64,000 bases of DNA from Stylophora pistillata (lineage: Eukaryota): contig NW_019217902.1 of the NCBI RefSeq assembly GCF_002571385.2, forward strand, positions 97,958-161,957, read 5' to 3'. The position numbers and the translations under genes are program-made. This document shows, piece after piece, positions 1 to 63,895 of this stretch; positions within the stretch are counted from its first letter, which is position 1; every line of letters begins with the position of its first letter. A model generated the notes under the pieces. That model had not been told where the DNA came from and made no database searches. It worked only from the letters and a program-made list of their open reading frames with translations.

Positions 1-1
1 G

Positions 2-171
2 GAAGTGACAAGAATATCACTGAGGCCTTCTCTCAACCACGTTTTTGTTCTTACCACACTTTGACCTCATCTGTGATTATTACATAAGACATTAAGAAGT
101 GACAAGAATATCACTGACGCCTTCTCTCAACCACGTTTTTGTTCTTACCACACTTTGACCTCATCTGTGAT
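2..171. repeat. Direct duplication of ~75 bp, period 94
   Basis: gaagtgacaagaatatcactga...ctcatctgtgat occurs at 2 and 96. Confidence 0.85.
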
Positions 172-244
172 CAATTACTGAACAGATGCGTGGCAACACT
201 GACATGGAATCTATTTAACAAACGGTAAACACCACAGCGTACAC

Positions 245-373
245 TATTGAGTTATGGCTGCACGCGGTAGGTTGCTAAGCACGAAAGAAGCGTAAGAGTC
301 GCGCGAGGCGCTGAGAGCGACTCTAGCTTTTTGAGTGCTTAGCAAACCTCCCACGTGCATCCATAACTCAATA
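245..373. mobile_element. Short palindromic MITE-like element
   Basis: tattgagttatggctgcacg...ttgctaagcac pairs with gtgcttagcaa...cgtgcatccataactcaata. Confidence 0.7.
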
Positions 374-461: not shown

Positions 462-1007
462 AACAACCAGTGGATCTTGTCTTTGCTCTGGGAGGAGCAG
501 GCTCCATCACCTCGGGCACTTTCCAGAAACAGAAGGACTTTGTTAAGCAGTTCCTGGATACATATGGTACCTCTGCTCCTGGTGTACATGTGGCCATTAT
601 TGACTACGCCACAGGCCAAATACTGGCCGACTTTCAGAACTTCGACACAGACAACCTGAAAGACAAGGTCGACAGGCTGCGATTGACACGCGGGGGACGA
701 GTTCAAAGTGCTTTAACGGGCGCAAATAACCAGTTTTTTAAGAATCCTAAGCTGATTAGATCTTATGCAATTAAAGCACTGATTGTTTTGACTGGAGAGA
801 GAACTAATGAAAGAGACGTAACGTTGCGTAATGCAGCGTCACCTTTGAAAAACCAAGGGATTAAGTTTGTAGCAGTGGCCGTCGGCGAGAACCCCGATAA
901 AAGGAAGCTGTTGATCTTTGCTTCTGGAGAAGAATATATTTTTGATTTCGACGACAATAAAGAACTGCCAGCATTGGTGCCAAAAGTATATGAAGTGATT
1001 ATAAAAG
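462..1007 (+). CDS. Exon 1: VWA domain 1 (MIDAS-degenerate)
   Basis: tgtag|AACAACCA acceptor, AAAG|gttggt donor, phase 1-1; EQPVDLVFALGGAGS...VYEVIIK. Confidence 0.85.
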
Positions 1008-4000
1008 GTTGGTTTCAACGACGGTTTGCATTATTCGGTAATTTTCCGTTACCCACTTTTCTTATTGCCGTTAACTGTCGCGTATAAGCCCCCACTTGTA
1101 AGCTCCCCCCGGACTAGGGGCAAATTTACCCGTAACCGAAAAAAAATACATCCGATTATAAACCCCCTCACCCCGATATGCGCGCCCCTTTTGCTCATCT
1201 TGTTTTAAGTATTAGGAGCTCTTCTGTTAATTAGACATTAAAATTTTGATCAGAGGAGAGCAAAGGTGAACTTCAAGGGAAAAGTCTGAACTTCCGTTTC
1301 ATTACGTTCCAATTTTGTTGTCAGATATAATTCTGTTTCAAATGTAATAAAATGAATTCGATTTATTGTTAAGCTTACTAGAAAAACCGGTAAATTCAAA
1401 ACGTATTTCATAAGCATTGTTTTAACTCGATTCGAAGCACTTTTTCTATCCCGGTAGTAAACCCCTCGGATAGAAGCCCTTCAATTATTAAAAGCCCTCC
1501 TTAAACTCTTTAGAAGCCTAAGGCTTGTAAGGGGCAGTCTATGGTATGTTGACAAAGAAATCACGGTGGTGAAATCTAACTGCACTGACATTGCGCTTGT
1601 TCGTGTCTTTCTGTAGATCCGTGCGAGAACAAGGTATGCCAGCACTATGCTCAGTGTGTTTCGTATGCAGATGGCAGGACCCAGTGCGCGTGCGATGAAA
1701 AGTGCGCCAAAATTGAAGATCCTGTATGTGGAACTGATGGTCAGGATTATGCTAACGAGTGTGTTTTGAAGGCGACAGCTTGTCGCCAGAGCAAAGCTGT
1801 GGCAGTGGCTGACAAGAGACCTTGCGGAGGTGAGACAATTGTACCTTTTACTTTTGGTGCTATCATGTAACCCATAAGTGCAAGTCAGCAATATATCTAG
1901 CCCCCCGTATCTTTGATCCCCAAGTGTCTAAACCCTCCCCCCCTGGTATCGCGAATCCCCCTCTTGTTTCTTGAGCCCCTTAAGTTTTAGGATCCCCCTT
2001 ATTTCGAACTCCCGATTTCGAACCCCAGGTATTGCCGCGACCTGCTAGTTTCTCAAACTCCGTAGTATCTCGAGCCCCGCATATAGTGAACTTCATGTCT
2101 CGTAGGCGTGGTCAGTTAATTAAATATGTCACGAAGAGAAACTGTAGCATTTCCCAATTCAGCATCTGACAGCACTGAGGCTTTATGCCCTGTGGAGTGA
2201 ACGGCTAAAATGAGGCATTACAGGATACAAGTTATACAAGAAACTCATAACCGACTTCGACGCTATGTACGTCTGGTTATATTATGTAACTGTCCACGGG
2301 ATAACATATTGGTCTTAATCTAGTAGAGATTCCTACTGAAATATTTGAACAGCGACTTATGGTACTTTCGTCTTACTTTTTAGCCTGTGTTCACGCTATG
2401 GACATCGGTGTAGTTTTGGATTCCTCTCGAAGTGTTGGTTGGACAAATTACGAGACCCTCAAACGCTCCCTTGCCAAACTGATCGACTACTTCCACGTTT
2501 CTAAAGACGGCACTCACTTTGGCCTTCTTCACTACAATCAGGACGCGTTCATGGACTTCGATTTTGCCAATTCTGCCTTGCATAACCCGCAGCCGCTGAA
2601 GGAGAAGATCTTGTCAGTAAAATACGATCCTGGGCGTACGCGCACAGACAAAGCAATCAAGATGGCAAACGAGAGACTGTTTACAGAAGAAGGCGGAGCG
2701 AGAAAGGGCGTGCCCAAGCTTCTGATTGTGATCACAGATGGAAAAACCAGTGATGATTCAGCTCCCTACTCGACAGTTTTGGCTCCATTAAAGGTCTGCT
2801 GAATTTGTTGCTAGAAGGGCTTTCTGATTTTGGACCGAAAAAAACCAAATCCAAAAAGCTGCTAGTAGAGCAATTTCAAATTGAGTCTCTAAAGTAACCC
2901 CAGATTGCATTGGTTTTGCTTTACTTCGCTCTGTGATTGGTACAGAAAACGTGCGCCTCTCTCAGCCAATCAGATACAAAGCTACGACCGATCTCAACTT
3001 GGTCGTCTGCATATTCCCGCGCTTTAGGCAGATTGTTTGTCGATACTTTGATTTCTCATTGGCTCATAAACGTATTATCCTTTCTTCTGATTGGCCGTTG
3101 TGACCCATTTGGTTTTGGTTTTACGGGACTCAACTTGACCAAGAGCTTTCTTCCTTTTTTTTGACAGTTTCGACTGCTGGCAGCCATCTTTTTCAAAACT
3201 TAGATATCGTCTTAAGGTCTTTACTGGGATATTGAAGTTCAGGCTTACAAAGCGATAGCATTCAATCTCGTAGAGTCTTGTCATTTCAGCACGCAAAGTC
3301 GCTGTGTTAAAAGGGTTCTCATTATCATTTATTTACTTTTAATCTATTCTTCATTTAATCTTACTTTTCTTTACGCTGATTAGCAATGAAAGTATTTTAT
3401 GATTGTGCTTTCAAAAGATTCTTGCGAAAAATCAAAAGGCGGTCGATTGCAAGTTTATCAGACCCGGGTATATCATATGACTGGCTCGCGCTAATATTGG
3501 ATAAAAATAGCGAGATAGTCGACAGAGCTGAATAATGAAATGCTACGTCAGAGGGTATGCGGTCAACAACGCGGGCTCAAGTGTCCTAGGTCTAAAATTT
3601 AGCGAAATTAGAGGAAAATGATAAGGGCTGACTTTTAAAACCGAGGAACTCTGTTTTCGTCGAAGGCATTTTCCTATTTCCAGAGGTTTTAAGGAGAAGA
3701 TTAATTTTAAAAATTTTTAGGGGATGTACCAAATTTTTGGAGGTTGTTCTGTAAAAGAAAAGCGGCAAGGAAAACGACGCGTCGAAGCAACAGAATAGGA
3801 AACCAACCATGCGAACGACTCAAAATCCGTGTTTCCGCGGCAAAACCTAGCGCATGCGTATACGTCATTCAGCTCTGCTGAGATAGTCTATGTTAACTCT
3901 TTGATCCTTAAGAGTGACTAGCATCTAATTTCTCTTTACAATATCACCCCTGAATCACACATTAAGGTCAGGAGAATAAAGGAAATGAGCACCAACTTAA

Positions 4001-7000
4001 GAAGTTCTCGATTGTTAAACAAATTCTCCTTGTCAGCACCTCGGGAAATGTATGAAAAACAGTATGGAGAATATGCATACTGATGTTAAGGTGTAAAGAG
4101 TTAGTTTAGGTCACTGAATATGAGTGTCATTTCCATTGTAGACCAAAGGAGTGCAGGTTATGGCTGTTGGTGTAGGGGCTGGAGCTGATGAGAGTGAACT
4201 GCGGACTATTGCCATGGGGAATTCTGCAAACGTTCTGAAGATGGGTTCATTTGGACAGCTTGTCGGAAGTTTGAGAACAGTAACCGAGAATTTATGTCAA
4301 GGTATGGATTTTTTCTTTTTTGAACTTTATTTTTTATTTAGACACGGTAAATCTATCAGATAAAATAATAATATTATTACAATCTATTATTACAATTACA
4401 ATCTACTTTAATTTATGTAAACATGATCTAAAATGTAAAAGTGAAATAGAAAAAAATAAAGAAATTCTGCTTTACATAGATGCCGTGTGCGTTTTGTCGA
4501 TTCAGACGAAGAAATTGCGACAACCATTTCGAAAGGATGAATCTTGTTTGAAAGACTTGCATAGGAAAACAATAGGCACTCGGGAATTTTGTGCGACCGC
4601 AATAACAAAAGCAACAAGAAACTGGCCATTACTAACACCATAACAGTGAGAACAAAAGTACCAATAAGATCAAGAGACAAACTAATAAGAAAACAGAAAT
4701 CGAGCCTAAAAAAGAAAAAGGCATTGGTTACTGAGTTTGTAACGGTTTTGTGACTGTCTTCTTCGAGCTGGATTTATTCCTGGTTTCAGAAAAAATTCTT
4801 GGTCCTCAGCTAGCAAGACATTCTGTGAAGGCCATCGCAGTTCTAAGATGCATCTGTTGTAAAACTAGTGTAACTGTGAAGCTTTACATAAATTCTGTAA
4901 CTTTCAAAAAAAGGGGGGTTTTCCCCTGGTCTCATTTTGAAAGGGTTGGGTCGGAGTGTCCTATTCGACTATTAATTGAGGTTATCACTGAAGTGACATG
5001 GTTTAGTGCACACTACAAGCGTCTCCTTTTTTTCGTCGAAGTCTGTCGCGCCGGTCAAAAAAAAAAAAAAAGGAAAGTCACTGCTGCGCAGAACTAAGGG
5101 AGTGGGCGCTGAAGTCTGGCGCGCTAATATTGGTTTTTGGTTTCGCCAATTTTTTTTTTAAATTGCTTGACGGATTTTGCCGAAAAGGAAGGACTGCTTG
5201 TAGTATAGGCCTTGTGGTGTTTCAATAACGACAACAAACACACTCACTAGTGTCGCTTTTCTCAATCTCCTTAGGCATTGAACCTTTGAACTTAGTGTTT
5301 GCCATCAATGCAAACGGACAAAATTCTAAGAATTACTTCGGCCTCATGACCGACACAATCAACTCAATCATCGACTCTTACGGACAGCGAAAAATCAGAT
5401 ATGGTCTCATTGTCTATGGCAGCAAAGCGGTGCCGCGAATCCAATTGACAGAGATCTTTAATAGCAAAGAGCAACTAAAAAACTACGTGAAAATGGTACA
5501 GCGGAGTCAAGGTGGGGCTGACTTAGCAGCCGCTCTCGAGAGCGCAAAGGTCATGTTTAGCGGTGAGATACCGGAACGTCGCAATGTGTTGGTGGTTCTG
5601 ACCGATAGCAAAGCGACAGGGGACAGAGCCAAAATTCAACCACTTGCAGATGAATTGCATGAGATGCGGGTCAAGGTTATAACTGTGGCTATGGGGAAGG
5701 AGTCAGACAAGAGTGAATTACGGCCTTTATCGCCCATGAAAGATAACAGTCTTAAGGAAGACCCCAAAGAGAGCCCTAAACAACTTGGTAACAGGATCAT
5801 GATAGAAGCTATTAAAGGTGAGCAACTTGCTTAAGGAAACTTTTTGCTCTTAATCTGTCCACGGGGGTAGACTGTTTTCAAGGTATCCCTGTAATTACAT
5901 GACGCCAAATGCAATTAAGGTAAGGTCAAAATGAAGTCACTGCAGTGGGGCTGCTAAGAAGGTTTGCAAGGGAATTGTGCTTCTGGGCTTTTGCTCAGTT
6001 TGCTTTACTGCTTTGTCAGTTTTGTCTCCTTCACCTATCCCTTACCCCTACCCCACTACAAGTTAGCTTGTGTCCACTCCACACACCAATATTTTGGTGT
6101 TGTGTTGACAGGTGTGCGAATCGGTTGCCATGGTTACCCCGTTGTTGCCAAGGAGATTACTGCCTTCTCCTGTCGAGGGAACCTACCCTCCTTTGCTATT
6201 GATGATGCGATTAAACCTGGATATCTTTTGCCTGAGGAACTGTATTACTAGGGGTTAACCCAGGGGTTTGAAATGACAGGACTCCTTTCTAGTTTAACCT
6301 CGCAAAATGAATTTTCTTCTGTCTTTTAATTATGATCAGAAATGAAGTATGTGCCTTTGGTGGACCTTGGCTTCGCTTTGAGTGTCTCTTCTTCAGATGC
6401 CAGTAAGAACTTCGACAAGATGAAATCCGTCATCGATTCCATTATTGACCAGTACAGCATCATCCGAATCAGATATGCGGTGGAAGTGTTTGGTAACGAC
6501 ACCAATACTGCCCTTGAATTTCATCAGAGTTTTACCAAAGGAAATGATTTGAAACGGTATCTTACTACAGTCATCCCTGTTTCCGGGGGGTCACGTTTAG
6601 ACATAGGACTAAAGGAGGGGGGAGACCTGTTTGAATCGGAAGGCACTCGTCCAAATGCACACAAAGTCCTTGTCGTTATCACCGACAAAAAATCGACAGG
6701 AGATGATCAGGCAGCAGAAACCGCCGCTAAAGAACTTCTAGAGCAGGGTATCAAAGTCATTGCCATCGGGTTGGGCAGCGAAAGCGACATAACGGAGCTT
6801 AAGTATATAGCAACAGATGTACGCCATGTTATCCCGGCCAAGATCACGGATGACTCAGATGAATTGAGTATGGAGGTCATGACTCTTGCTTTCAAAGGTA
6901 ATGTGTCCGGGGTCAATTGTTTTGGAAAGAATGGACAAGGTGTTAACAGTTCGATATTTTACTCCCAAGCTTTTCTTTTGTAAATCAGAATCAGAGTAAC

Positions 7001-58000: not shown

Positions 58001-61000
58001 CAGGACCTGTCCAACTTCTCCACGAATAATAACCACAGACACATGCTTCATAATTTTGTGTTAAAACTTGACGTTTTTTTTCTATCTGTGAAGTTATTGG
58101 TTCTTCTTTCGCACAATCAAGTCCTCTTGCGTACACTTAAAGGAATAGATGAAATCTTCTTGAGTGCAAACTGAAATTAGCTGAATCACTTCGATGTTTT
58201 TACAAGTAGTTTTTTTCAGATTTGAATTACCAAACATTTCCCTGACTTCTCTCGATTTCATGACGAAAATTGACTTTTGAATAACACGACATGAGTATTT
58301 CTTGTATTCTCTCTCAGATAAAAACGTATTTTGACTCCATCTCACGTCCTTCTGGCGAACCCGACCTCGAGCGAGCTTTATCAGAAGCCAGGAAATTATT
58401 CGACCAGGCTTCGCCCCGCCCGAATGCCAAGAAGGTGTTAGTGGTCATCATGGACAAGAAATCTTCTAATAATTATGAGAAGATTGAAGTCGCCCTCAAG
58501 CCTCTTAAGGAAGATGACATCAAAGTTGTGCCGGTTGCCGTCGGTACTGATGCCAGTTTAAATGAACTGAAGAACATTACGTCCGCTGAGGGATATGTGG
58601 TGACAGCAGAGAAGACCACAGATCCTGTGAAGCTTGCAGAGAAGATCATGACCAAAGTGACCATGGGTAAATGATTATTAATCACGTGCAATGTGAATGG
58701 CATGGAATCCAAGATATGACGTACTCTACCACTTCCTATCTCTTCACTTTAGGAAAAATATCTTCAAATTCACCTTTTTTCTTGAATAGGAAAAACCTCG
58801 AATTTGTAAAAGTTCTCCTGGCTAGCTAGTTTTACTTTTATAACAATTATAACACACTTCTTTGCATCATTTGGGATAAAGTTACAAACCACAGTTAATT
58901 TTGCTGCGTGAACAAGGAGCCGATTCTTCCTAACTACTGTTAAAACGTGGCCTTCTCTCCCAAGCCTCACGTGGCCTTCTCTCCCAAGCCTCACGTGGCC
59001 TTCTCTCCCAAGCCTCAACATAATCGAGGCTGATGTGGATGGAAGACTAAGAAACGTGCAACCTGATGTGTAGGGGGAAGGGAGTTGGTGGGTGAGTAGG
59101 ACGAGATCGCGAATGACCTTGCTGAGGCTTCTGGGCCCATCTTGCTTCATCTCACAAAGTGGATGCGTTAACAGCAGAAAAGTGTGAACCATCAATGCAC
59201 TACGTCTATCCGTTTACAAAACTAACAAAAGATGTTTCTTTTTTTTTTCTTAGAAATATTGGACGTACCTGAGACTGACATTATTTTTGCAATCAGCGCC
59301 ACTGCACAGGTGGATTACATAGAAAACTTCCGTCAGATGAAAGAGATCATCATTGCCATGATTGACAAGTACGGCAGAGGAGACCTTAAGTACTCGGTCA
59401 TAGTCTACGGAGATATACCGCGGCCCGAACTTCGCTTAAGCAACATCTTTGACTCGGACGAAAACTTAATGAGTTTTATCCGTTTAATTCGTAATAGTCG
59501 TGGAGCATCACTTTCTAAAGCCCTAACACTCTCGAACCAGGTAGAGTAGAGAAGACATTATATTTTTATGTGACTTGTTTGCCTTTTAGTCAAACAATGA
59601 AAGTTAGTACACTACAATCAAACTAGAAAGAGCAATTTTTGGTTGAGTTTCGTAAGTAGTTTGCCATTGTCTGGGTTTGCGACTGGCCTAGGAAACTTGC
59701 GTTACCCTAACATTTTGTCGGACACAATTTACAGCCGTTCTGAGTTTGCGCAGGAGATTCTGTTGAATTACGTGTCGCAAAGCATCACGGGGCTGTTTTG
59801 GTACTGCAATTATATCCTTTCTCATTGGCTCGCTGTATTTCAATCTTGGTTTTGATTTGTTGGGGTGATTAGTTTTGGTTTGGTCTTAAAAAATTTACAA
59901 AGAATCTATCTGTTGAGGGTAACGTCAGATTATGTAAATTCCGTGAAAACGGTCAGAAATGTCACTGAACCACCCTAAGATTGGAAGTTTTCGATCTTTG
60001 AAGGGTGAGTATGGGACTTTGAAAGGGACCTAGAAAATATAAGATTAAATTATTTGGAGCCCAGATCGGTTTTTTTGTATTTTGGTTTCTTCTATCGAGT
60101 CTTTCGCGATGAATCATTGTAGCTGAAAGTCTGTCACACAGTAACTTATTTTGTTCCTCTCTGAAGGAGTTCGTTTCATTGGGACGTTCAAACGCCAGAA
60201 AGATTTTGGTTGTAATCACAGACAAGAGATCCACGAGTGATATCAGTGACGTCAGTAAAGAAGCCAGAATCCTGGAGCAGGAAGACGTCAGAGTTATACC
60301 AGTGGCACTTGGAAACGAGGCCAACGAAAACGAGTTGCAGAAGATCACGCCGTGGTTGGATGATTTAATAGAGACTGATAAGGATAGCAATCCATACAAG
60401 GTGGCAAAGGTGATTCTGAAGATTGGGTTGAAAGGTTGGTGGAATGTCATTTTTACATTCGGTGATTTGCATCCGGAGTAACGGTCTGACGTGCAGGTTC
60501 TCATAAATTGTAGCAAATAACGTAATTTTACCATCGATTTATACCACAAATGACATTTCTGGTGAGAAAAAAACTGTTATTAGACGGTGAACTTGATAGT
60601 AATGCGTCAGAGCTATCACCTGCATCCGTTGCAACGACCAGGCGCAACAAAAATCGATCGCATCTGTTTATCTTTTTGTTAATCAACGTTCGTAAGACAT
60701 TTGTTTCTTGTTGAGCAATGTTAAATGTACAGACGTCAGGTTGTGGAGTGTTAACCCCTCGACCCCTAAGAGTGACCAGCATCTAAATTCTCCTTACAGT
60801 ATCACCCCTGAGTCACACATTATATTTTCCTTGTCAACGCGTTAGGAAATGTTTAGAGAACAGTATGGAGAATATGCTTACTGATGTTAGGTGGAGAAGG
60901 GTTAAATTAACATTTAATGATCTCCCCAATTCATAAGAAGTCCAATGTTTGTGGAATGTTTGTAGAAAACTCATTTTATTTCACATTTTGTAGTTATCAA

Positions 61001-63895
61001 TCAACTTTCGTGCTTCGTTTCGAGCTCTTACTGTTTTCTTTTATCTGCAGACAAGCCAAAACTTCCAGAATTGGATCTAGCCTTCGCTATTAGCGCTACA
61101 GCTCTAAAAGCCGGTGACAACCTCAAGAAAACGAACGAAATAATCAAGGATATTGTCAGCAAGTATGGAATCAATAAAATGCACTACAGTCTGGGTACAT
61201 TTGGAAGCACACTGAACGTCATTATCAAGTTCAGCCGACACGTAAACAGCAATGCTCAGTTCATGGGCCTGGTGGACACTGTCCGCGAAGTTCCAGGAAG
61301 CTCTGACTTGGCTAAAGCTCTGGAAGAGTCCCCAGCCATGTTCACAGAGGAGAATGGAGGGCGACCGAATGCCAAAAAGATTTTAGTCGTGATTATTGAT
61401 AACAAGTCAGACAGTTCTAGTGATGACACTGAAGATGCCGCGGCTGTGGCGAGGGAAGCTGGCATCCGAGTGATCCCAGTTGGGCTTGATAGAGCGGACA
61501 AAGGGGAGCTGGAGAAGACGACAGCTGTAGAGGAGGATGTGCTAACACCATCAGACAGCGACTCGGCTCAAAACATTGCGAAGGATATTATAAGAAGGGC
61601 ACTGAATGGTAAGAAAACCGTGTGATCTCTGTTGACGGAGTGCCACGTGTAAGGTTGTAGTGGGAATCCAGTTACTTAGAGTCCAAGTTCATTGTTATAT
61701 TTTTCTTATCTTTCAGAGACAGCATCGGTTCCTCTTTTAGATTTGGGCTTTGCAATCAGCGCTTCAGCCCAGGATGCAGAAAAAACGTTTACTCTGATGA
61801 AAGAAGCCATAGACTCCATCGCTACACGTTACGAGGCCAGCAAAATACGCTATGCTCTACTCACCTTCGGCAGCACAGTCAATAAAGAGGTGAGTTTCAC
61901 TAAAGATTCGCCCAACCCAGAAGAACTACGAAAGGCTTTAGAAGGGGCCAGTAACCTGAGTGGTGCACCAGACTTGAAGAAGGCTCTCGAGGAGGCAAAG
62001 ATGATGTTTAAACAGGCTACCCCTCGACCCGGAGCTAAGAAGGTTCTCATAGTAATAATGGATAAAAAGTCAGCCAGTGATTCCGGTGATGTCAAGAAGG
62101 CAGCTAAGCTGTTAGAAGATGTGAATGTCAAAGTGGTCCCTGTTGCAGTGGGTTCCGAAGTCAGTCTATCTGAACTTGAAAAAACAACAACTAATAAGAA
62201 ATTCATCGTCATTGCTGGAAAAGATGAAGATCCAGAGAGACTTGGAGAAGAAATAATCAGAAAAGCTATAAAGAGTGAGTGTTTTGTTGGCCTAAACGCG
62301 TGTTACTTGGCTAAGGCTTCTATGTTGTATGCGTCTTCTCTTGCTAATATTTAGAATTACTGACTGATGTTTCCTAGCTGTAGTAGCTGTTGGGATTGTT
62401 TATGCGCTTGAGTCTTTGTTGCGACCTGTTGACAACCCCAGGATGAATTCTATTGTACGTAAAACTTAAACTAATCTTTAAAAGTGTTGTCACTATCTAC
62501 GTATAAAGTGGAACACATTGAAAGTATCTTTCCGGGTGAATATTAAAACGGAAGCCATCTTTGATTTCTAACAGATCTTCCAGCGGTCCCGATGGTTAAC
62601 CTGATCTTCGCGATCAGCGGTCTCTCCTCTAATGCAAACGAGAAGTTCCAAAAGATGAAAGACCTCATCAAAACGATGGTGGATGAATATGGCAAGGAAA
62701 GGATTCACTACAGTCTAATTGTGTTTGGAAACGAACCTTCAGTTGAGCTGAGATTCTCCAGGACCTTCGATAGTGATGCTGAACTTAAAGCACATCTTGA
62801 TCTTAAGGCTAGAGCCACGGACGGAGCTGCTTTGGATAAGGCCCTGAAGAAAGCTGCTGAGTTGTTTGGGGAATATGACCGGGAGGGCGCTAAGAACGTA
62901 CTGGTGGTGATAAAGGACAAGAGGTCTACCAGTAACAGGAAGGACGTGCAGAGCATGGCTATTCCATTGTGGGAGGGCGACGTCGAGGTGATTCCAATTG
63001 CGTTTGGTAGTCAGGCTGATAAGGGGGAGCTGGAGTTGATTACGCTTCACAAGGAAAACTTGATATTAGCATATATAACGAACAAGACGGTGAACGTTGC
63101 TCAGAGAATCATGGACAAAATGATGAAAGGTAAAGTAACGACATCAAAGCGGTTGATTTGTCATCTTAGGAAAATGCAATAATGTTACTGTTAATGAAAA
63201 TCACGTTAGTAGCTGCTGATGAGTTTAATCAGCTTTGATACATCAGGGTTGCTGCCAGAAGAGGCGTTTTCTTTGGAGTCAAACCTCTCGCGGCTTTGTC
63301 CCTCAACTCAAAGGTTTTTGTTTTAATTCAAAGCGCTAAAAATCCGCCAGCTAAGTAGAGTAAACTCAGGGCCACACCCCTCACTGCAAATCAGCCGTTA
63401 AAATCCGCAACTTCGTCTTCCAACAGCTAGACACATTTTTCCCTTTTTTACTGCACACATTGATTGACGCTATTATTTGGTGTTTTCTTAGCTATTCCGA
63501 TGGTAGACTTGGCCTTTGCCATCAGTTCCAATGCCGCTGGAAAAGAGGAAACGTTTCAGAAAATCAAAGACGCCATTGACTTTATCATCACCTACTACGG
63601 CAACGATCGCATTCGTTATGCAGTCGTCACATTCGGTTTATCCTCCTACGAGGACGTCGAGTTCCAAGATGGTCGGACTATGGATGAACTCAAACAATTA
63701 ATCGAGCGTCTTCCTCGTGCTATTGGTGTACCAAATCTGAAAGAGGCGCTGGAGACAGCAAAAGGAGTGTTTGATCAGGCATTAGACAGACCAAGGGCCA
63801 AAAAGTTCTTGGTGGTGGTCATGGACTCCAATTCAGGTAACCAGCCAGGAGAGATCCAACAAGCTTCAGAAGCTATAGAAGAGGATGAAATCAAG
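462..63895 (+). CDS. Giant tandem-VWA protein gene, partial: 60 exons, 49 VWA domains + 1 follistatin/Kazal domain. Domains resemble collagen VI/matrilin VWAs; no collagen triple helix, start or terminal stop in the window
   Basis: Successive + strand ORFs repeat the VWA pattern DLxFAIS...YG...I(R/H)Y(S/G)xIxFG...L(D/E)xAL...RPxAxKVLVVxxD...IxVIPVxxG. Each is bounded by polypyrimidine-AG and GT sites with compatible phases at all 59 junctions. Confidence 0.9.
1066..1546. mobile_element. Degenerate MITE with imperfect TIRs
   Basis: tgccgttaactgtcgcgtataagcc versus reverse complement of the end (taccatagactgccccttacaagcc); internal (t)aagccc sub-repeats. Confidence 0.4.
1617..1829 (+). CDS. 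Exon 2: follistatin (FOLN+Kazal) domain
   Basis: ctgtag|ATCC...GGAG|gtgaga, phase 1-1; DPCENKVCQHYAQCVSYADGRTQCACDEKCAKIEDPVCGTDGQDYANECVLKATACRQSKAVAVADKRPCG has 10 Cys and the PVCGTDG-x-x-Y-x-NEC Kazal motif; not in the ORF track. Confidence 0.92.
2384..2793 (+). CDS. Exon 3: VWA domain 2, N part (intact MIDAS DSSRS..T..D)
   Basis: tttag|CCTGT, AAG|gtctgc (phase 1-0); ACVHAMDIGVVLDSSRSVG...GRTRTDKA...VITDG. Confidence 0.9.
2867..3146. mobile_element. Dispersed ~280-bp non-autonomous element; related copies near 17875-18118, 22059-22337, 28756-29025, 59628-59890
   Basis: Shared motifs (agagc..tttcaa, tgtgattgg, ccaatcaga, ttcccgcgc, ctcattggctc) recur in both orientations. Confidence 0.55.
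3523..3877 (+). mobile_element. ~355-bp TIR element, copy 1
   Basis: cagagctgaat...attcagctctg inverted ends; near-identical to 13482-13835. Confidence 0.8.
3893..4104 (+). mobile_element. TTAA-flanked ~210-bp MITE (piggyBac-type ends)
   Basis: ttaactcttt...aaagagttag; same family as 13061-13271 and 60751-60905. Confidence 0.75.
4142..4301 (+). CDS. Exon 4: VWA domain 2, C part
   Basis: tgtag|ACCAAA, CAAG|gtatgg (phase 0-1); TKGVQVMAVGVG...ENLCQ. Confidence 0.88.
5275..5817 (+). CDS. Exon 5: VWA domain 3
   Basis: ttag|GCATT, AAAG|gtgagc, phase 1-1. Confidence 0.88.
6340..6897 (+). CDS. Exon 6: VWA domain 4
   Basis: tcag|AAATG, AAAG|gtaatg, phase 1-1. Confidence 0.88.
7043..7690. repeat. 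Compound microsatellite: (TCTG/TCTA)n, then inverted (GACA/GATA)n with a higher-order unit
   Basis: tctgtctg tract 7043-7175; gcagatagataagcagacagacagacag units 7235-7580. Confidence 0.9.
7883..8202 (+). CDS. Exon 7: VWA domain 5, N part
   Basis: caaag|AAATC, AAG|gtagaa, phase 1-0; ends ARK. Confidence 0.85.
8769..9000 (+). CDS. Exon 8: VWA domain 5, C part
   Basis: tcag|GTCCTG, ACAG|gtaaca, phase 0-1; starts VLVVITD. Confidence 0.87.
9607..10158 (+). CDS. Exon 9: VWA domain 6
   Basis: ttag|TTCAA, CGAG|gtagaa, phase 1-1. Confidence 0.87.
10395..10525. repeat. Polypyrimidine low-complexity tract
   Basis: Almost pure C/T run. Confidence 0.7.
10934..11182 (+). CDS. Exon 10: VWA domain 7, N part
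   Basis: acag|ATGGG, ACAG|gtgaca, phase 1-1. Confidence 0.85.
11577..11885 (+). CDS. Exon 11: VWA domain 7, C part
   Basis: tcag|GGCCT, AAAG|gtatgc, phase 1-1; GPDLQKAL... Confidence 0.85.
12360..12560 (-). mobile_element. SINE fragment (same family as 32170-32450)
   Basis: Reverse complement matches gtgcctctctccac...aattgtcagggaagcctgatgaaatgctgggg...gagtacagactt. Confidence 0.7.
12689..13011 (+). CDS. Exon 12: VWA domain 8, N part
   Basis: ttcag|TACGC, AAG|gtaaca, phase 1-0; ends NAMK. Confidence 0.87.
13061..13271 (+). mobile_element. TTAA-flanked ~210-bp MITE
   Basis: ttaacccttt...cagtatggagaatatgcat...gaggattaa. Confidence 0.75.
13482..13835 (+). mobile_element. ~355-bp TIR element, copy 2
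   Basis: cagagctgaataa...ttattcagctctg; colinear with 3523-3877. Confidence 0.8.
14060..14291 (+). CDS. Exon 13: VWA domain 8, C part
   Basis: ttag|GTTGTG, GAGC|gtgagg, phase 0-1. Confidence 0.85.
14497..14745 (+). CDS. Exon 14: VWA domain 9, N part
   Basis: ttag|CTGTG, AAAG|gtaata, phase 1-1. Confidence 0.85.
15264..15440 (+). mobile_element. Degenerate tRNA-derived SINE (family of 56480-56785)
   Basis: B-box cccgggttcgagttcc followed by aactggttgtcccctgccagttgggatt. Confidence 0.6.
15612..15929 (+). CDS. Exon 15: VWA domain 9, C part
   Basis: gcag|GCGTT, ACAG|gttagt, phase 1-1. Confidence 0.85.
16606..17163 (+). CDS. Exon 16: VWA domain 10
   Basis: atag|ATCCC, AGAT|gtaagt, phase 1-1. 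Confidence 0.87.
18161..18709 (+). CDS. Exon 17: VWA domain 11
   Basis: gcag|GCAAG, CTTG|gtatga, phase 1-1. Confidence 0.87.
19607..20167 (+). CDS. Exon 18: VWA domain 12
   Basis: ttag|AATCA, CCAG|gtttgg, phase 1-1. Confidence 0.86.
20477..21031 (+). CDS. Exon 19: VWA domain 13
   Basis: ttag|GTTTG, AAAG|gtattt, phase 1-1. Confidence 0.87.
21396..21917 (+). CDS. Exon 20: VWA domain 14 (short, C-terminal in-frame deletion)
   Basis: ttag|AACGT, GATG|gtaagt, phase 1-1; 522 nt. Confidence 0.86.
22368..22925 (+). CDS. Exon 21: VWA domain 15
   Basis: ccag|TTGTG, ACAA|gtaagt, phase 1-1. Confidence 0.88.
23120..23630. repeat. (CCGT/CCCT)n microsatellite flanked by (TCTG)n-rich units
   Basis: ccgtccgtccgtccctccgtccgt... 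over ~500 bp. Confidence 0.95.
23837..24388 (+). CDS. Exon 22: VWA domain 16
   Basis: ttag|ATCGT, ATAA|gtaagt, phase 1-1. Confidence 0.86.
24467..24678. mobile_element. Palindromic MITE
   Basis: gcatgcagtagcgaaaatggcagatttgacgaattttcgtca pairs with tgacgaaatttcgttaaatctgccgttttcgttactgcgtgc. Confidence 0.75.
24833..25161 (+). CDS. Exon 23: VWA domain 17, N part
   Basis: ttag|ATGGA, AAG|gtaaaa, phase 1-0; ends NAAK. Confidence 0.86.
25506..25734 (+). CDS. Exon 24: VWA domain 17, C part
   Basis: gtag|GTGTTA, AAGG|gtaagt, phase 0-1. Confidence 0.87.
26115..26330. mobile_element. Hairpin MITE with ~80-bp TIRs
   Basis: cttttacagttgtgggcttggtggccaagcctttgaacaggagtgaggctaagggtgacc pairs with ggtcacccttagcctcactcctgttcaaaggtttggccaccaagcctacaactgtaaaa; TA at both ends. 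Confidence 0.85.
26359..26570. mobile_element. TTAA-type MITE, related subfamily
   Basis: ttaacccattcaatccca...tgggaattaaaaggttta imperfect TIRs, ~210 bp. Confidence 0.55.
26722..27273 (+). CDS. Exon 25: VWA domain 18
   Basis: acag|GTAAA, AGAG|gtgggt, phase 1-1. Confidence 0.86.
28165..28731 (+). CDS. Exon 26: VWA domain 19
   Basis: aaag|TTTCA, ACAG|gtatgt, phase 1-1. Confidence 0.86.
29550..30101 (+). CDS. Exon 27: VWA domain 20
   Basis: branch-point-like gactaac upstream, tcag|AACCA, ACAG|gtataa, phase 1-1. Confidence 0.87.
30790..31344 (+). CDS. Exon 28: VWA domain 21
   Basis: tcag|ACCCA, CAAA|gtaagt, phase 1-1. Confidence 0.88.
31494..32145. other. Assembly gap (652 N) inside an intron
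   Basis: Run of N. Confidence 1.
32170..32450 (+). mobile_element. SINE-like element with degenerate tRNA-like head; short 5' relic also at ~18780-18850
   Basis: cattgtgttgtgttcttgggcaaaacattttactc...aattgtcagggaagcctgatgaaaatgctggggg...gagtacagacttt. Confidence 0.65.
32521..33072 (+). CDS. Exon 29: VWA domain 22
   Basis: ttag|TTATC, GAGG|gtaagt, phase 1-1. Confidence 0.88.
33400..33948 (+). CDS. Exon 30: VWA domain 23
   Basis: ccag|AAAAA, AGAA|gtaagt, phase 1-1. Confidence 0.88.
34860..35420 (+). CDS. Exon 31: VWA domain 24
   Basis: ttag|AGAGA, CAAC|gtacgt, phase 1-1. Confidence 0.86.
36128..36691 (+). pseudogene. Exon 32: VWA domain 25 with in-frame TAG at 36397-36399 (pseudo-exon, null allele or base error)
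   Basis: acag|TTCCA, GAAA|gtaagt intact; reads ...GGTPDLD*TLEYAKNA..., where sibling domains have PDLDKAL; frame continues normally. Confidence 0.8.
37073..37636 (+). CDS. Exon 33: VWA domain 26
   Basis: acag|ATCTG, AAAG|gtaagt, phase 1-1. Confidence 0.88.
38359..38910 (+). CDS. Exon 34: VWA domain 27 (divergent)
   Basis: tcag|AGGAG, GAAG|gtatct, phase 1-1. Confidence 0.84.
39211..39774 (+). CDS. Exon 35: VWA domain 28
   Basis: ttag|GTCTG, GGCG|gtaagt, phase 1-1. Confidence 0.88.
40123..40338. mobile_element. Degenerate MITE
   Basis: gggccagttgttcgaa...ttgaacaacccgacc imperfect inverted ends. Confidence 0.45.
40513..41061 (+). CDS. Exon 36: VWA domain 29
   Basis: acag|TTGCG, AAAG|gtaaaa, phase 1-1. 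Confidence 0.87.
41280..41635 (+). CDS. Exon 37: VWA domain 30, N part
   Basis: atag|AACCA, CAG|gtacat, phase 1-0. Confidence 0.84.
42069..42255 (+). CDS. Exon 38: VWA domain 30, C part
   Basis: ttag|GCTAGA, AAAA|gtacgt, phase 0-1; ARARRLVDQGVTVIPV... Confidence 0.82.
42551..43099 (+). CDS. Exon 39: VWA domain 31
   Basis: acag|GACCT, AAAG|gtaaga, phase 1-1. Confidence 0.88.
43277..43716. mobile_element. Tc1/mariner-superfamily (pogo/Tigger-like) MITE, 440 bp
   Basis: Perfect 29-bp TIR cagtaaacacccgcatataagaacacatg with TA target-site duplication on both sides. Confidence 0.92.
44324..44875 (+). CDS. Exon 40: VWA domain 32
   Basis: tcag|ATACT, CAAG|gtgggt, phase 1-1. Confidence 0.88.
45350..45904 (+). 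CDS. Exon 41: VWA domain 33
   Basis: gtag|AACTG, GAAG|gtaact, phase 1-1. Confidence 0.88.
46141..46701 (+). pseudogene. Exon 42: VWA domain 34 with in-frame TAA at 46257-46259 (pseudo-exon, null allele or base error)
   Basis: ccag|ATGTC, AATG|gtaaga intact; reads ...DEIINS*SPFATRYSVIKFG..., with the stop at the conserved Tyr; frame continues. Confidence 0.8.
47042..47599 (+). CDS. Exon 43: VWA domain 35
   Basis: acag|ATTCT, GAGG|gtgaga, phase 1-1. Confidence 0.88.
47640..48050. repeat. CT-rich low-complexity intron tract
   Basis: ~400 bp strongly pyrimidine-biased. Confidence 0.8.
48081..48635 (+). CDS. Exon 44: VWA domain 36
   Basis: caag|TAG|AT tandem acceptor (48081 or 48084), ACAG|gtactc, phase 1-1. 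Confidence 0.85.
49264..49488 (+). CDS. Exon 45: VWA domain 37, N part
   Basis: ttag|ATGTT, ATCA|gtatgt, phase 1-1. Confidence 0.85.
49930..50265 (+). CDS. Exon 46: VWA domain 37, C part
   Basis: gcag|AATCC, AAAG|gtaagt, phase 1-1. Confidence 0.85.
50922..51479 (+). CDS. Exon 47: VWA domain 38
   Basis: atag|ATTAT, GAAG|gtgggt, phase 1-1. Confidence 0.87.
51812..52366 (+). CDS. Exon 48: VWA domain 39
   Basis: tcag|CCATC, GAAG|gtcagt, phase 1-1. Confidence 0.88.
52503..53063 (+). CDS. Exon 49: VWA domain 40
   Basis: gcag|ATTTC, AACG|gttagt, phase 1-1. Confidence 0.88.
53358..53918 (+). CDS. Exon 50: VWA domain 41
   Basis: ttag|ATGAA, AAAG|gtattt, phase 1-1. Confidence 0.88.
54605..55153 (+). 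CDS. Exon 51: VWA domain 42
   Basis: gaag|ATTTG (weaker acceptor), GACA|gtgagt, phase 1-1. Confidence 0.84.
55740..56297 (+). CDS. Exon 52: VWA domain 43
   Basis: ctag|GTGAG, AACA|gtaagt, phase 1-1. Confidence 0.88.
56480..56785 (-). mobile_element. Full-length tRNA-derived SINE with (ATT)n tail
   Basis: Minus strand: ggaggcaacgcggccgagtggtcagcg (A-box-like)...cccgggttcgagtccc (B-box), ~200-bp body, then (att)n tail seen as (aat)n at 56480-56510. Confidence 0.8.
57218..57426 (+). CDS. Exon 53: VWA domain 44, N part
   Basis: gcag|AAACT, ACG|gtacag, phase 1-0. Confidence 0.82.
58318..58666 (+). CDS. Exon 54: VWA domain 44, C part
   Basis: tcag|ATAAAA, ATGG|gtaaat, phase 0-1. Confidence 0.85.
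58945..59016. repeat. Perfect 24-bp tandem repeat x3
   Basis: acgtggccttctctcccaagcctc three times with no spacers. Confidence 0.95.
59254..59540 (+). CDS. Exon 55: VWA domain 45, N part
   Basis: ttag|AAATA, CAG|gtagag, phase 1-0. Confidence 0.86.
60167..60434 (+). CDS. Exon 56: VWA domain 45, C part
   Basis: gaag|GAGTTC, AAAG|gttggt, phase 0-1. Confidence 0.83.
60751..60905 (+). mobile_element. TTAA-flanked MITE, internally deleted copy
   Basis: ttaacccct...gaacagtatggagaatatgc...aagggttaa. Confidence 0.75.
61051..61608 (+). CDS. Exon 57: VWA domain 46
   Basis: gcag|ACAAG, AATG|gtaaga, phase 1-1. Confidence 0.88.
61717..62274 (+). CDS. Exon 58: VWA domain 47
   Basis: tcag|AGACA, AAGA|gtgagt, phase 1-1. 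Confidence 0.88.
62575..63129 (+). CDS. Exon 59: VWA domain 48
   Basis: acag|ATCTT, AAAG|gtaaag, phase 1-1. Confidence 0.88.
63492..63895 (+). CDS. Exon 60: VWA domain 49, N part (continues beyond window)
   Basis: ttag|CTATT, AAG|gtgggt, phase 1-0. Confidence 0.84.

What the first reader, a model, noticed from the sequence alone, without database searches (positions are those of the whole stretch)
462..63895. Giant gene with at least 49 tandem VWA domains (about 9,100 aa in this window alone, open at both ends)
Seen: 60 frame-compatible exons totalling ~27.3 kb encode 49 mutually divergent VWA domains joined by short linkers. No Gly-X-Y repeat, signal peptide, TM segment, start or terminal stop lies in the window. 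Known: collagen VI alpha-3, among the most VWA-rich well-characterised proteins, has 12 VWA domains; matrilins have 1-2 and VWF has 3. Inference: this is not a collagen VI orthologue but a titin-scale VWA-array protein, probably extracellular given the follistatin domain. Candidate roles are a mesoglea/skeletal-matrix/adhesion filament or a diversified recognition molecule. Automated annotation would probably label or fragment it as 'collagen alpha-3(VI)-like'.
Basis: partly seen in the sequence, partly recalled or inferred. Interest (0 to 1): 0.88.

Follow-up and report, generated by a model that had tools for sequence, protein, structure and literature searches.

The report
Giant coral matrix gene, 62+ VWA domains
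The window is the middle of one transcribed coral gene of at least 146 kb that encodes a secreted protein of about 14,700 residues or more, built from at least 62 cysteine-free VWA domains, 38 follistatin/Kazal modules and two GON domains; no described protein has this architecture.

Summary
The window holds 49 VWA domains (PF00092), all on the + strand. They lie in 60 phase-compatible exons (59 VWA pieces and one follistatin/Kazal exon), about 27.2 kb or 9,065 codons.

The N gap lies between a phase-1 donor (31344) and a phase-1 acceptor (32521), so it does not disturb the frame.

PolyA RNA contigs from two studies (19.9 and 17.6 kb) join VWA22 to VWA28 at the predicted GT..AG sites. Together they imply at least 32 kb of continuous mRNA. 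One contig reappears in VWA43 within 9 nt of the predicted position.

The TAG in VWA25 reads AAG in both RNA contigs. The TAA in VWA34 replaces a near-invariant Tyr codon and was not tested at the letter.

The gene runs far beyond the window:
- Upstream is a signal-peptide exon, conserved in 14 coral assemblies, then FS-GON-FS-VWA-FS-FS.
- Downstream are 12 more VWA, a second GON, about 28 FS, two EGF and a MIDAS-bearing VWA.

No Gly-X-Y run occurs, so it is not a collagen. Domains are about 30% identical to each other but 52-76% identical to colinear orthologues in another coral.

The most likely function is a giant extracellular beads-on-a-string matrix linker. That function is inferred, not shown. 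Sub-findings of this window were noted earlier in the scan.

The parts
462..1007 (+). VWA1, single exon, phase 1-1
   Evidence: Pfam VWA E 1.3e-21; local HMM 183 bits; splice sites
1617..1829 (+). Follistatin/Kazal (FS) module, single exon, phase 1-1
   Evidence: Kazal_2 E 3.8e-10; local FS HMM 73 bits
2384..4301 (+). VWA2, exons 2384-2793 and 4142-4301; the only in-window domain that keeps DxSxS (MIDAS)
   Evidence: Pfam VWA E 8e-26; alignment
5275..5817 (+). VWA3
6340..6897 (+). VWA4
7883..9000 (+). VWA5, exons 7883-8202 and 8769-9000 (phase 0 intron)
9607..10171 (+). VWA6 (donor 10158 or 10171; both are compatible with an acceptor of VWA7)
10977..11885 (+). VWA7, two exons (first acceptor 10934 or 10977; second exon 11577-11885)
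   Evidence: orthologue in L027, 60-76% id
12689..14291 (+). VWA8, exons 12689-13011 and 14060-14291
14497..15929 (+). VWA9, exons 14497-14745 and 15612-15929
16606..17163 (+). VWA10
   Evidence: RNA runs hold about 0.42 of the words of 16500-22950
18161..18709 (+). VWA11
19607..20167 (+). VWA12; folded with AlphaFold2, pLDDT 95, classical VWA fold
20477..21031 (+). VWA13
21396..21917 (+). VWA14 (short unit, also short in the orthologue)
22368..22925 (+). VWA15
23137..23626 (.). (CGTC)n / 16-nt simple tandem repeat in the intron between VWA15 and VWA16. It explains the stop-free frames and the spurious Pfam 'PT repeat' hit.
23864..24388 (+). VWA16
24833..25734 (+). VWA17, exons 24833-25161 and 25506-25734; same intron position in the orthologue
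26722..27273 (+). VWA18
28165..28731 (+). VWA19
29550..30101 (+). VWA20
30790..31344 (+). VWA21, ends at a phase-1 donor 150 nt before the N gap
31494..32145 (.). Assembly gap (652 N) inside the intron between VWA21 and VWA22. Flanking splice phases match (1/1). Not filled.
32521..33072 (+). VWA22. Its last 30 nt are the letters that precede VWA23 in both RNA contigs.
   Evidence: (loose ends)
33400..33948 (+). VWA23, RNA-verified exon
   Evidence: joint 33948|34860, GT..AG, two studies
34860..35420 (+). VWA24, RNA-verified exon
   Evidence: joints 33948|34860 and 35420|36128
36128..36691 (+). VWA25, one RNA-verified exon. The assembly has an in-frame TAG at 36397-36399; both RNA contigs read A at 36397 (AAG, Lys).
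37073..37636 (+). VWA26, RNA-verified exon
   Evidence: joints 36691|37073 and 37636|38359
38359..38910 (+). VWA27 (divergent N-terminal third), RNA-verified exon
39211..39774 (+). VWA28, acceptor RNA-verified
   Evidence: joint 38910|39211
40513..41061 (+). VWA29
   Evidence: included in the X2 contig by length
41280..42255 (+). VWA30, exons 41280-41635 and 42069-42255
42551..43099 (+). VWA31
44324..44875 (+). VWA32
45350..45904 (+). VWA33
46141..46701 (+). VWA34, one exon with an in-frame TAA at 46257-46259, at the column of the near-invariant Tyr. The exon is included in the X2 RNA contig by length. The letter in RNA was not seen.
47042..47599 (+). VWA35
48084..48635 (+). VWA36
49264..50265 (+). 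VWA37, exons 49264-49488 and 49930-50265
50922..51479 (+). VWA38
51812..52366 (+). VWA39
52503..53063 (+). VWA40
53358..53918 (+). VWA41
54605..55153 (+). VWA42 (acceptor 54605 or 54614; the 9-nt offset of the RNA contig would fit 54605)
55740..56297 (+). VWA43. Window 56099-56128 is read in the X2 RNA contig directly after record position 14508.
57218..58666 (+). VWA44, exons 57218-57426 and 58318-58666
59254..60434 (+). VWA45, exons 59254-59540 and 60167-60434
61051..61608 (+). VWA46
61717..62274 (+). VWA47
62584..63129 (+). VWA48
63492..63895 (+). VWA49, first exon (HMM 1-137). Its second exon lies just past the window end, at 64320-64503.

Best explanation
The window is the central part of a single protein-coding gene of a scleractinian coral. 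The gene spans at least 146 kb, from window -12,256 to about +134,000.

The modelled coding sequence is about 44 kb, or about 14,700 residues. This does not count what three assembly gaps may hide.

Domain order:
1. Signal peptide.
2. A conserved N-terminal domain of about 110 aa, possibly NtA/NTR-like.
3. FS, GON, FS, VWA, FS, FS.
4. VWA1, FS, then VWA2 through about VWA57, back to back.
5. FS, VWA x2, FS x3, VWA, GON, VWA.
6. About 28 FS, then 2 EGF and a MIDAS-bearing VWA.

Shown here: the exons are spliced into one long polyA mRNA, the domain order is conserved one-to-one in another coral, and each exon equals one domain with phase 1-1 borders.

Inferred: the product is secreted. The VWA units are linker-less, almost free of Cys and Trp, and lack MIDAS. 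They would form a beads-on-a-string filament a few hundred nm long. It would act as a multivalent, metal-independent protein binder and cross-linker, most likely of collagen, as VWF A3, PTMP1 and the collagen VI alpha3 N-domains are. The site would be the mesoglea or basement membrane.

Also inferred: the FS/Kazal tail would serve as an agrin-like rod for ligand, protease or glycan binding, and the GON domains may help ER export.
For: **Domain content.**

**One strand and phase-compatible exons.** All 123 domain pieces lie on one strand and are phase-compatible. Introns have a median of 569 nt, and only 335 nt separate the last array VWA from the first tail FS.

**RNA.**
- PolyA contigs of 19,892 nt (X2) and 17,578 nt (X4), from two studies, give five exact GT..AG joints.
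- A further junction, VWA22 to VWA23, comes from the loose-end letters.
- X2 re-enters the window at 56099, within 9 nt of the position predicted by summing exons VWA28 to VWA43.
- X4 carries 15,212 nt upstream of 33399. About 14,940 nt are modelled back to exon 1.
- Stranded raw reads show the RNA is + strand.

**Expression breadth.** Twelve RNA runs hold 0.34-0.44 of the words of another stretch of the gene.

**5' end.** Exon 1 has a signal-peptide-like start and a strong phase-1 donor. It has 14 coral homologues at 58-84% identity that diverge exactly at the donor. In another coral it is followed by the same FS-GON-FS-VWA-FS-FS order.

**Conservation.** VWA7 to VWA19 are colinear 1:1 with a second coral at 52-76% identity, against 48% or less to any paralogous domain.

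**Fold.** AlphaFold2 pLDDT is 95. The nearest structures are PTMP1, VWF A3, integrin I domains and collagen VI alpha3 N5. In a profile search of PDB sequences, collagen VI alpha3 is first.

**Composition.** There are 10 Cys in 9,004 aa, the pI is 5.3, and units are 171-195 aa long, mostly 180-188.
Against: - Two in-frame stops stand in the assembly. The TAG is absent from RNA of other genotypes. The TAA was not checked at the letter.
- Continuity outside 33.0-39.25 kb and around 56.1 kb rests on contig lengths and splice phases, not on aligned reads.
- Continuity of the FS tail, and the 3' end, rest on splice phases and short introns only.
- Three N gaps (0.65, 7.8 and 3.5 kb) interrupt the locus.
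- De Bruijn contigs can be chimeric, and a contig is not a single molecule.
- No protein-level, localisation or binding data exist, so the function is inference from domain homology.
- The NtA-like reading of the N-terminal domain failed Pfam and PDB sequence searches, and its model is of low confidence.
Confidence: 0.8

Rival explanations
1. The locus is a tandem cluster of several separate, shorter VWA genes that only look continuous.
For: Automated gene callers on related assemblies report each exon as its own small 'protein'. Three assembly gaps could hide gene borders.
Against: There is no signal-peptide, start or terminal exon between domains. Every border is a phase-1 splice site with short introns. 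RNA contigs of 17.6 and 19.9 kb run through many domains. The only signal-peptide exon found is 12 kb upstream and is conserved there in other corals.
Confidence: 0.04
2. The gene is a decaying or non-functional array. The in-frame stops truncate the protein or send the mRNA to nonsense-mediated decay, and the transcript is noise.
For: TAG at 36397 and TAA at 46257 stand in the assembly. Depth in raw-read RNA runs is low.
Against: There are only 2 stops in about 9,065 codons. The TAG reads AAG in two RNA data sets. The TAA is one base away from the near-invariant Tyr codon. Each domain has a 52-76% identical orthologue in the same order in another coral, although paralogous domains share only about 30%. 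Exon 1 is 58-84% conserved. The k-mer depth is 75 in one polyA library.
Confidence: 0.06
3. The symmetric phase 1-1 exons are a cassette array that is alternatively spliced into many shorter isoforms. On this reading it is a diversified recognition molecule, not one giant filament.
For: All domain exons are symmetric, so skipping any of them keeps the frame. Domains are individually distinct.
Against: In two independent polyA data sets the six laid exons are all included, with no skipping joints. The X2 contig includes all exons from VWA28 to VWA43 within 9 nt of the prediction. Contigs drop rare variants, so minor isoforms are not excluded.
Confidence: 0.08
4. The gene is a collagen VI alpha3-type chain whose triple helix lies outside the window.
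For: Collagen VI alpha3 is the best match in the PDB sequence search, with 9 stretches and E 1.5e-104.
Against: No run of six or more Gly-X-Y triplets occurs in any frame from -13 kb to +142 kb. The flanks hold FS/Kazal, GON and EGF modules instead.
Confidence: 0.02

Closest known systems
Collagen VI alpha3 chain, N-terminal VWA array (N10-N1)
   Same: Tandem extracellular VWA domains, mostly without a working MIDAS. One domain per phase 1-1 exon. It is the best PDB sequence match, and the N5 domain is among the structural neighbours.
   Different: Collagen VI alpha3 has 10 N-terminal VWA against 62 or more here. Here there is no triple helix and no C1-C2, FN3 or Kunitz tail. The units here are almost Cys-free and linker-less, and the last helix ends at residue 184 of 186. 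FS, GON and EGF modules are present instead.
Nematostella vectensis uncharacterized proteins LOC5520454 (XP_048580141) and A7RKC9 (3,546 aa)
   Same: The closest named relatives of the VWA subtype, with the same MIDAS-less 'FAISAT' motif and back-to-back units.
   Different: Only 14 VWA, in two blocks of 7. By my reading of the printed sequence they end in EGF, a discoidin-like domain, a transmembrane segment and a cytoplasmic tail. They show no FS or GON hits. They are paralogue-level relatives at about 29% identity. No paper mentions them.
Agrin, N-terminal half, and octocoral 'agrin-like' skeletal matrix proteins (PMC7853314)
   Same: Long arrays of follistatin-N plus Kazal modules, one per exon, and a secreted matrix protein. 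The N-terminal domain has an ESM-feature look-alike in the agrin NtA cluster (score 0.92, 172 shared features).
   Different: Pfam NtA does not match the exon or anything in this genome. No LamG, SEA or LE modules were found. Agrin has no VWA or GON domains.
Mussel byssus PTMP1 and von Willebrand factor A3 domain
   Same: Top structural neighbours of VWA12. From general knowledge, both bind collagen, and VWF A3 does so without a metal ion.
   Different: They carry two domains and one domain respectively, not an array. About 20-23% identity.
Branchiostoma LOC144905190 (6,024 aa)
   Same: The largest multi-VWA protein returned by the 1.84-billion-protein search, with 21 VWA.
   Different: By my reading of its sequence, its VWA domains keep MIDAS, are interleaved with Sushi and EGF modules, follow a CUB domain and end in a transmembrane segment. 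It has about a third as many VWA domains.
ADAMTS9 / GON-1 C-terminal GON domain
   Same: Two strong GON domains, E 1e-58 and 3e-53. The GON domain is reported to promote ER-to-Golgi transport (PMC3338439).
   Different: No metalloprotease, disintegrin or TSP1 modules here. GON is embedded between FS and VWA modules.

Membership tests
VWA domain superfamily (PF00092) | Sequence match above the Pfam gathering score | tested here: met
   all 32 single-exon in-window domains match, best E 7e-28.
VWA domain superfamily (PF00092) | Rossmann-like alpha/beta fold | tested here: met
   AlphaFold2 pLDDT 95. TM-score 0.75-0.86 to VWF A3, integrin I domains, PTMP1 and collagen VI N5.
VWA domain superfamily (PF00092) | MIDAS motif DxSxS...T...D (defines the metal-dependent subgroup, not the fold) | tested here: not met
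   The DxSxS column reads A/I-S-A-x in 48 of 49 in-window domains. Only VWA2 keeps it.
Collagen VI alpha chains | Collagenous Gly-X-Y triple-helical domain | tested here: not met
   No run of six or more Gly-X-Y triplets in six frames from -13 kb to +142 kb.
Collagen VI alpha chains | N-terminal VWA array related to alpha3 N-domains | tested here: met
   9han_C is the top PDB hit, 9 stretches, E 1.5e-104.
Agrin | NtA laminin-binding domain (PF03146) after the signal peptide | tested here: inconclusive
   No Pfam hit at E<=1. No PF03146 hit in the genome, although the control genomes did not ring either. No PDB sequence hit. The model has pLDDT 46 and no fold match. The ESM look-alike at rank 2 is an NtA cluster, and NTR/TIMP clusters follow.
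Agrin | Array of follistatin-like (FOLN + Kazal) modules | tested here: met
   38 FS hits in the locus. Kazal_2 E 1e-8 to 1e-14.
Agrin | C-terminal SEA, EGF and three LamG modules | tested here: not met
   Only two EGF and a VWA follow the FS tail. ORFs up to +142 kb gave no LamG or SEA hits. Short exons could have been missed.
ADAMTS9/20 (GON-ADAMTS) | GON domain | tested here: met
   PF08685, 199 and 181 bits. These are the two best GON matches in the genome.
ADAMTS9/20 (GON-ADAMTS) | Reprolysin metalloprotease, disintegrin and TSP1 repeats | not tested
   None appeared among the ORFs scanned in the locus, but there was no dedicated search.

The most novel reading that the evidence does not exclude
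The chain of 62 or more disulfide-free, linker-less VWA domains is an extracellular mechanical spring, a 'titin of the mesoglea'. Its N-terminus would be anchored in the basal lamina by an NtA/NTR-like domain. Under load the domains would unfold one by one, as the disulfide-free VWF A2 domain does. Each unfolding would release about 65 nm of chain, several micrometres in all. This would let coral tissue stretch and retract over the skeleton without tearing. The GON domains would be built-in export aids for a protein of about 1.6 MDa.
Probability: 0.15. Interest if true: 0.9.

Novelty: new variant of a known kind. Interest (0 to 1): 0.68.

Why it matters
If the model holds, this is the most VWA-rich protein on record in the sources searched. 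It has 62 or more VWA domains. Collagen VI alpha3 has 12, and the largest hit among 1.84 billion protein representatives has 21. It would also be one of the largest animal proteins, comparable to MUC16.

The gene is conserved domain by domain across stony corals, so it is likely a structural component of coral tissue that current annotations split or miss. Skeletal, mucus and mesoglea proteomes searched against fragmented gene models would under-report it.

The near-absence of cysteine in 9,000 extracellular residues is unusual for matrix VWA domains. It makes a concrete, testable mechanical hypothesis possible.

The locus also gives a natural series of 62 divergent but orthologously conserved VWA domains for studying how domain arrays evolve without concerted evolution.

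Tried and rejected
1. **'PT disordered repeat' ORF 23045-23704 as a mucin-like linker exon: rejected.** It is a (CGTC)n microsatellite that is open in several frames on both strands.

2. **NtA identity of the N-terminal domain: left as a lead only.** Pfam, a PDB profile search, a genome-wide PF03146 search and an AlphaFold2 model with Foldseek (pLDDT 46) gave no support. Only the ESM-feature look-alike and the strand/helix pattern agree.

3. **Nematostella-type C-terminus (EGF, discoidin, transmembrane segment) in this locus: not found.** tblastn found only a weak EGF match.

4. **3' end: not found.** ORFs from 134 to 142 kb have no Pfam match. A different gene family starts by about 142-150 kb.

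6. **A 66-nt 'intron' that would remove the TAA in VWA34: rejected.** My splice program proposed it. It would delete about 20 core positions of the domain, and the RNA contig length fits the full exon.

7. **Steps not taken.**
Searches were made exon by exon, by reference. Only the two halves of split domains were joined inside local scripts, with X at the stops, for the HMM alignment and identity matrix.
- No complex prediction was run.
- The N gaps were not filled or looked up.
Full report
**1. Observation**

The window (G000 contig C119:97958-161957, + strand; genome 397.6 Mb in 5,513 contigs) is about 42% G+C and has one N run, 31494-32145. It holds 49 open stretches of 150 aa or more on the + strand and 18 on the minus strand.

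Pfam PF00092 (VWA) matched 15 of the 20 + strand stretches sent, 13 of them above the gathering score. I built a 182-position HMM from ten of these and searched all six-frame open stretches. It returned 61 pieces, every one on the + strand. They assemble into 49 domains:
- 35 lie in one open stretch.
- 11 are split by an intron.
- 2 are split by an in-frame stop.
- The last is cut by the window end.

All 32 single-exon domains that I aligned (A2) match PF00092 individually.

A phase-aware splice model gives 60 exons in the window: 59 VWA pieces and one follistatin/Kazal exon at 1617-1829 (Kazal_2 E 3.8e-10). They total 27,194 nt, or about 9,065 codons.

Almost every domain begins at a phase-1 acceptor about 14 nt before the HMM start and ends at a phase-1 donor at the HMM end. 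Internal introns have matching phases.

The domains are mutually divergent, with mean 30% and maximum 44% identity. The array is therefore neither an assembly duplication nor a recent amplification.

**2. The assembly gap**

VWA21 ends at a phase-1 donor (31344) 150 nt before the gap. VWA22 begins at a phase-1 acceptor (32521) 376 nt after it. The gap is therefore in an intron, or hides only whole symmetric exons, and the frame is kept by splice phase whatever its true length.

RNA contigs that begin upstream of the gap continue through VWA22 into VWA23. Whether an extra exon is hidden cannot be decided from the contig lengths.

**3. One transcript**

Twelve RNA runs hold 0.34-0.44 of the sampled words of 16500-22950, close to its exonic share of 0.51. 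DNA-like runs hold 0.83-0.87.

I laid two polyA contig sets and two raw-read runs on 33300-39250. The results were:
- One X2 contig (19,892 nt) and one X4 contig (17,578 nt), from different studies, cover exactly the predicted exons.
- They join the exons by GT..AG joints at 33948|34860, 35420|36128, 36691|37073, 37636|38359 and 38910|39211.
- All five predicted donors and three of five top-ranked acceptors were exact. The other two acceptors were the second-ranked in-phase sites.
- The 30 letters that precede 33399 in both contigs are the end of the VWA22 exon (33042-33071), which gives a sixth junction.

The X2 contig also made a 34-nt chance match, followed by letters that are exactly window 56099-56128, inside VWA43. 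Summing the model exons from VWA28 to that point predicts record position 14,466. The observed position is 14,475. The 9-nt difference equals the distance between the two candidate acceptors of VWA42. So all exons of VWA28 to VWA43, including VWA34, are in that contig.

X4 carries 15,212 nt upstream of 33399. The model sums to about 14,940 nt back to and including exon 1. X2 carries 14,031 nt downstream of 39250, which reaches the VWA exon at about +70.6 kb. Together this is at least 32 kb of continuous mRNA covering the whole window.

Stranded raw reads put the RNA on the + strand.

Caveats: only the laid stretch and the two loose ends were seen base by base, and contigs are not single molecules.

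**4. The in-frame stops**

At 36397 the assembly has T (TAG), but both RNA contigs read A (AAG, Lys) at k-mer depths of 75 and 24. This is an allele of the sequenced individual or an assembly error.

The TAA at 46257-46259 sits at the column of the near-invariant Tyr of the family, one base away from TAT/TAC. The exon is included in the mRNA by length.

**5. The gene beyond the window**

I fetched the contig from its start to +204 kb and scanned it with local VWA, FS and GON HMMs. All hits are again on the + strand. The layout in window coordinates is:

| Position | Feature |
|---|---|
| -8975 | FS |
| -7954 | GON |
| -6398 | FS |
| -5445 / -4232 | VWA (split) |
| -2192, -1607 | FS, FS |
| 462 to 63895 | the window's array |
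| up to 99803 | 12 more VWA, interrupted by N gaps at 71443-79213 and 88253-91706 |
| 84326, 93584, 94146, 95091 | FS |
| 97121 | second GON |
| 100139-121786 | about 28 FS |
| 124866-125312, 128804-129220 | two EGF-containing ORFs |
| 129998 / 133712 | MIDAS-bearing VWA |

Pfam confirms Kazal (E 1e-7 to 1e-14) and GON (E 1e-58 and 3e-53).

A phase-compatible path exists through all 123 pieces. Only 335 nt separate the last array VWA from the first tail FS.

Nothing of these families lies between the contig start and -8975. From about +142 kb another gene family begins.

**6. The 5' end**

An ORF at -12268 to -11810 starts with MEWIFLRILVVFCILRTVCYA, continues for about 110 residues and ends at a CAG|GTACGA phase-1 donor at -11857. 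Fourteen homologues at 58-84% identity, from other coral assemblies, share the start and diverge exactly after the donor.

In one of those assemblies the exon is followed on the same strand by FS-GON-FS-VWA-FS-FS, as here. The signal-peptide reading is by eye; no predictor was available.

The domain has no Pfam or PDB sequence match, and its model is poor (pLDDT 46; five strands and a C-terminal helix). ESM-feature look-alikes include an agrin NtA cluster (rank 2, 172 shared features) and NTR/TIMP clusters. PF03146 finds nothing in this genome. NtA-like is a lead, not a finding.

**7. Size and composition**

The modelled coding sequence is 44,125 nt, or about 14,700 aa. This excludes the EGF/VWA tail and whatever the gaps hide.

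The 49 in-window domains contain 10 Cys and about 0.1% Trp in 9,004 residues. Their pI is 5.3, they carry 42 N-glycosylation sequons, and their unit lengths are 171-195 aa, mostly 180-188. DxSxS is lost in all but VWA2.

**8. Conservation**

The ENA contigs that carry P0003 (61% identical to VWA12) show the same array. Their domains map in order, one to one, onto VWA7 to VWA19 at 52-76% identity, against 48% or less to any other domain of this gene. The short VWA14 and the intron of VWA17 are also shared. Each domain therefore has an identity of its own that has been kept since the two corals diverged.

**9. Relatives**

A scan of 1.84 billion protein representatives with VWA12 found no protein of comparable architecture. 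The results were:
- The best named hit is Nematostella 'uncharacterized protein LOC5520454'. Its cluster mate A7RKC9 has 14 VWA of the same subtype and, by my reading of the sequence, an EGF, a discoidin-like domain and a transmembrane segment.
- The largest multi-VWA hit is an amphioxus protein with 21 VWA, which I read as interleaved with Sushi and EGF modules.
- About 100 hits are single-exon fragments from coral assemblies, which shows how gene callers shred this gene.
- No product of this locus itself was in that library.

In the PDB, collagen VI alpha3 is first by profile, with 9 stretches and E 1.5e-104. PTMP1, VWF A3, integrin I domains and collagen VI N5 are the structural neighbours of the confident VWA12 model.

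Within this genome the subtype is confined to this gene, plus a small cluster on contig C58 and one hit on C102. Other, lower-scoring VWA arrays lie on C669, C244, C360 and C78.

**10. Interpretation**

Shown here: one long spliced polyA transcript, the domain content, the conservation, and the absence of collagen sequence.

Inferred from the families:
- The product is secreted.
- It is a bead chain a few hundred nm long.
- It binds proteins without a metal ion. Collagen is the most likely ligand because PTMP1, VWF A3 and the collagen VI N-domains are the nearest relatives.
- The FS/Kazal tail is like the agrin-like matrix proteins reported from octocoral skeletons (PMC7853314).
- The GON domains may assist ER export (PMC3338439).

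The near-total lack of cysteine suggests, more speculatively, that the domains could unfold under load.

Literature searches found no description of such a protein.

Noticed in passing
window 209-373: A palindromic, MITE-like repeat of about 165 bp. It has dozens of copies at 92-95% identity on many contigs, and each copy matches on both strands.
   Followed up: no
window 1-218 and G000:C119:97257-97474 (window -700 to -483): An exact 218-bp duplicate lies about 700 bp upstream, across a 19-N gap (window -289 to -271). It looks like a scaffolding or gap-closure duplication artefact in the intron before VWA1.
   Followed up: no
window 44324-71108: There is a weak period-3 signal among VWA domains. 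Mean identity at offsets 3, 6 and 9 is 0.36-0.365, against 0.32-0.35 at other offsets. It is not visible over the whole array.
   Followed up: partly
G000:C58:474432-501531 and C102:281718-282242: A second, much smaller cluster of the same MIDAS-less VWA subtype (at least 7 domains, on both strands). It may be the counterpart of the Nematostella 14-VWA transmembrane protein.
   Followed up: no
G000 contigs C669 (66-142 kb), C244 (2-123 kb), C360 (147-218 kb), C78 (484-538 kb): Further large arrays of VWA exons of other subtypes (65-117 bits to the profile). This coral carries several multi-VWA giant genes (compare notes s1-776283 and s1-776251).
   Followed up: no
window +149,882 to +197,348 (G000:C119:247839-295305): Tandem paralogues with very long intron-less ORFs (1,730, 723+269+672 and 1,467 aa) that start with '...WTAELDKKEHKNWVMVGCALNITKNG'. 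A different gene family lies directly downstream of the giant gene. Not identified.
   Followed up: no
L032:13881-17654 (-): In a more distant coral, the first intron of the orthologous gene holds a 1,257-aa ORF with a DNA_pol_B_2 domain (Polinton/Maverick-type element).
   Followed up: no
whole genome: The genome has about eight GON-domain loci. The two best-scoring are the two inside this gene, so GON is not confined to ADAMTS-type proteins in this coral.
   Followed up: partly
window 106839-107051 (downstream flank): One FS module is split into two pieces 18 nt apart (HMM 1-31 and 36-75). This may be an in-frame stop or a frameshift like those in VWA25 and VWA34. Not examined.
   Followed up: no
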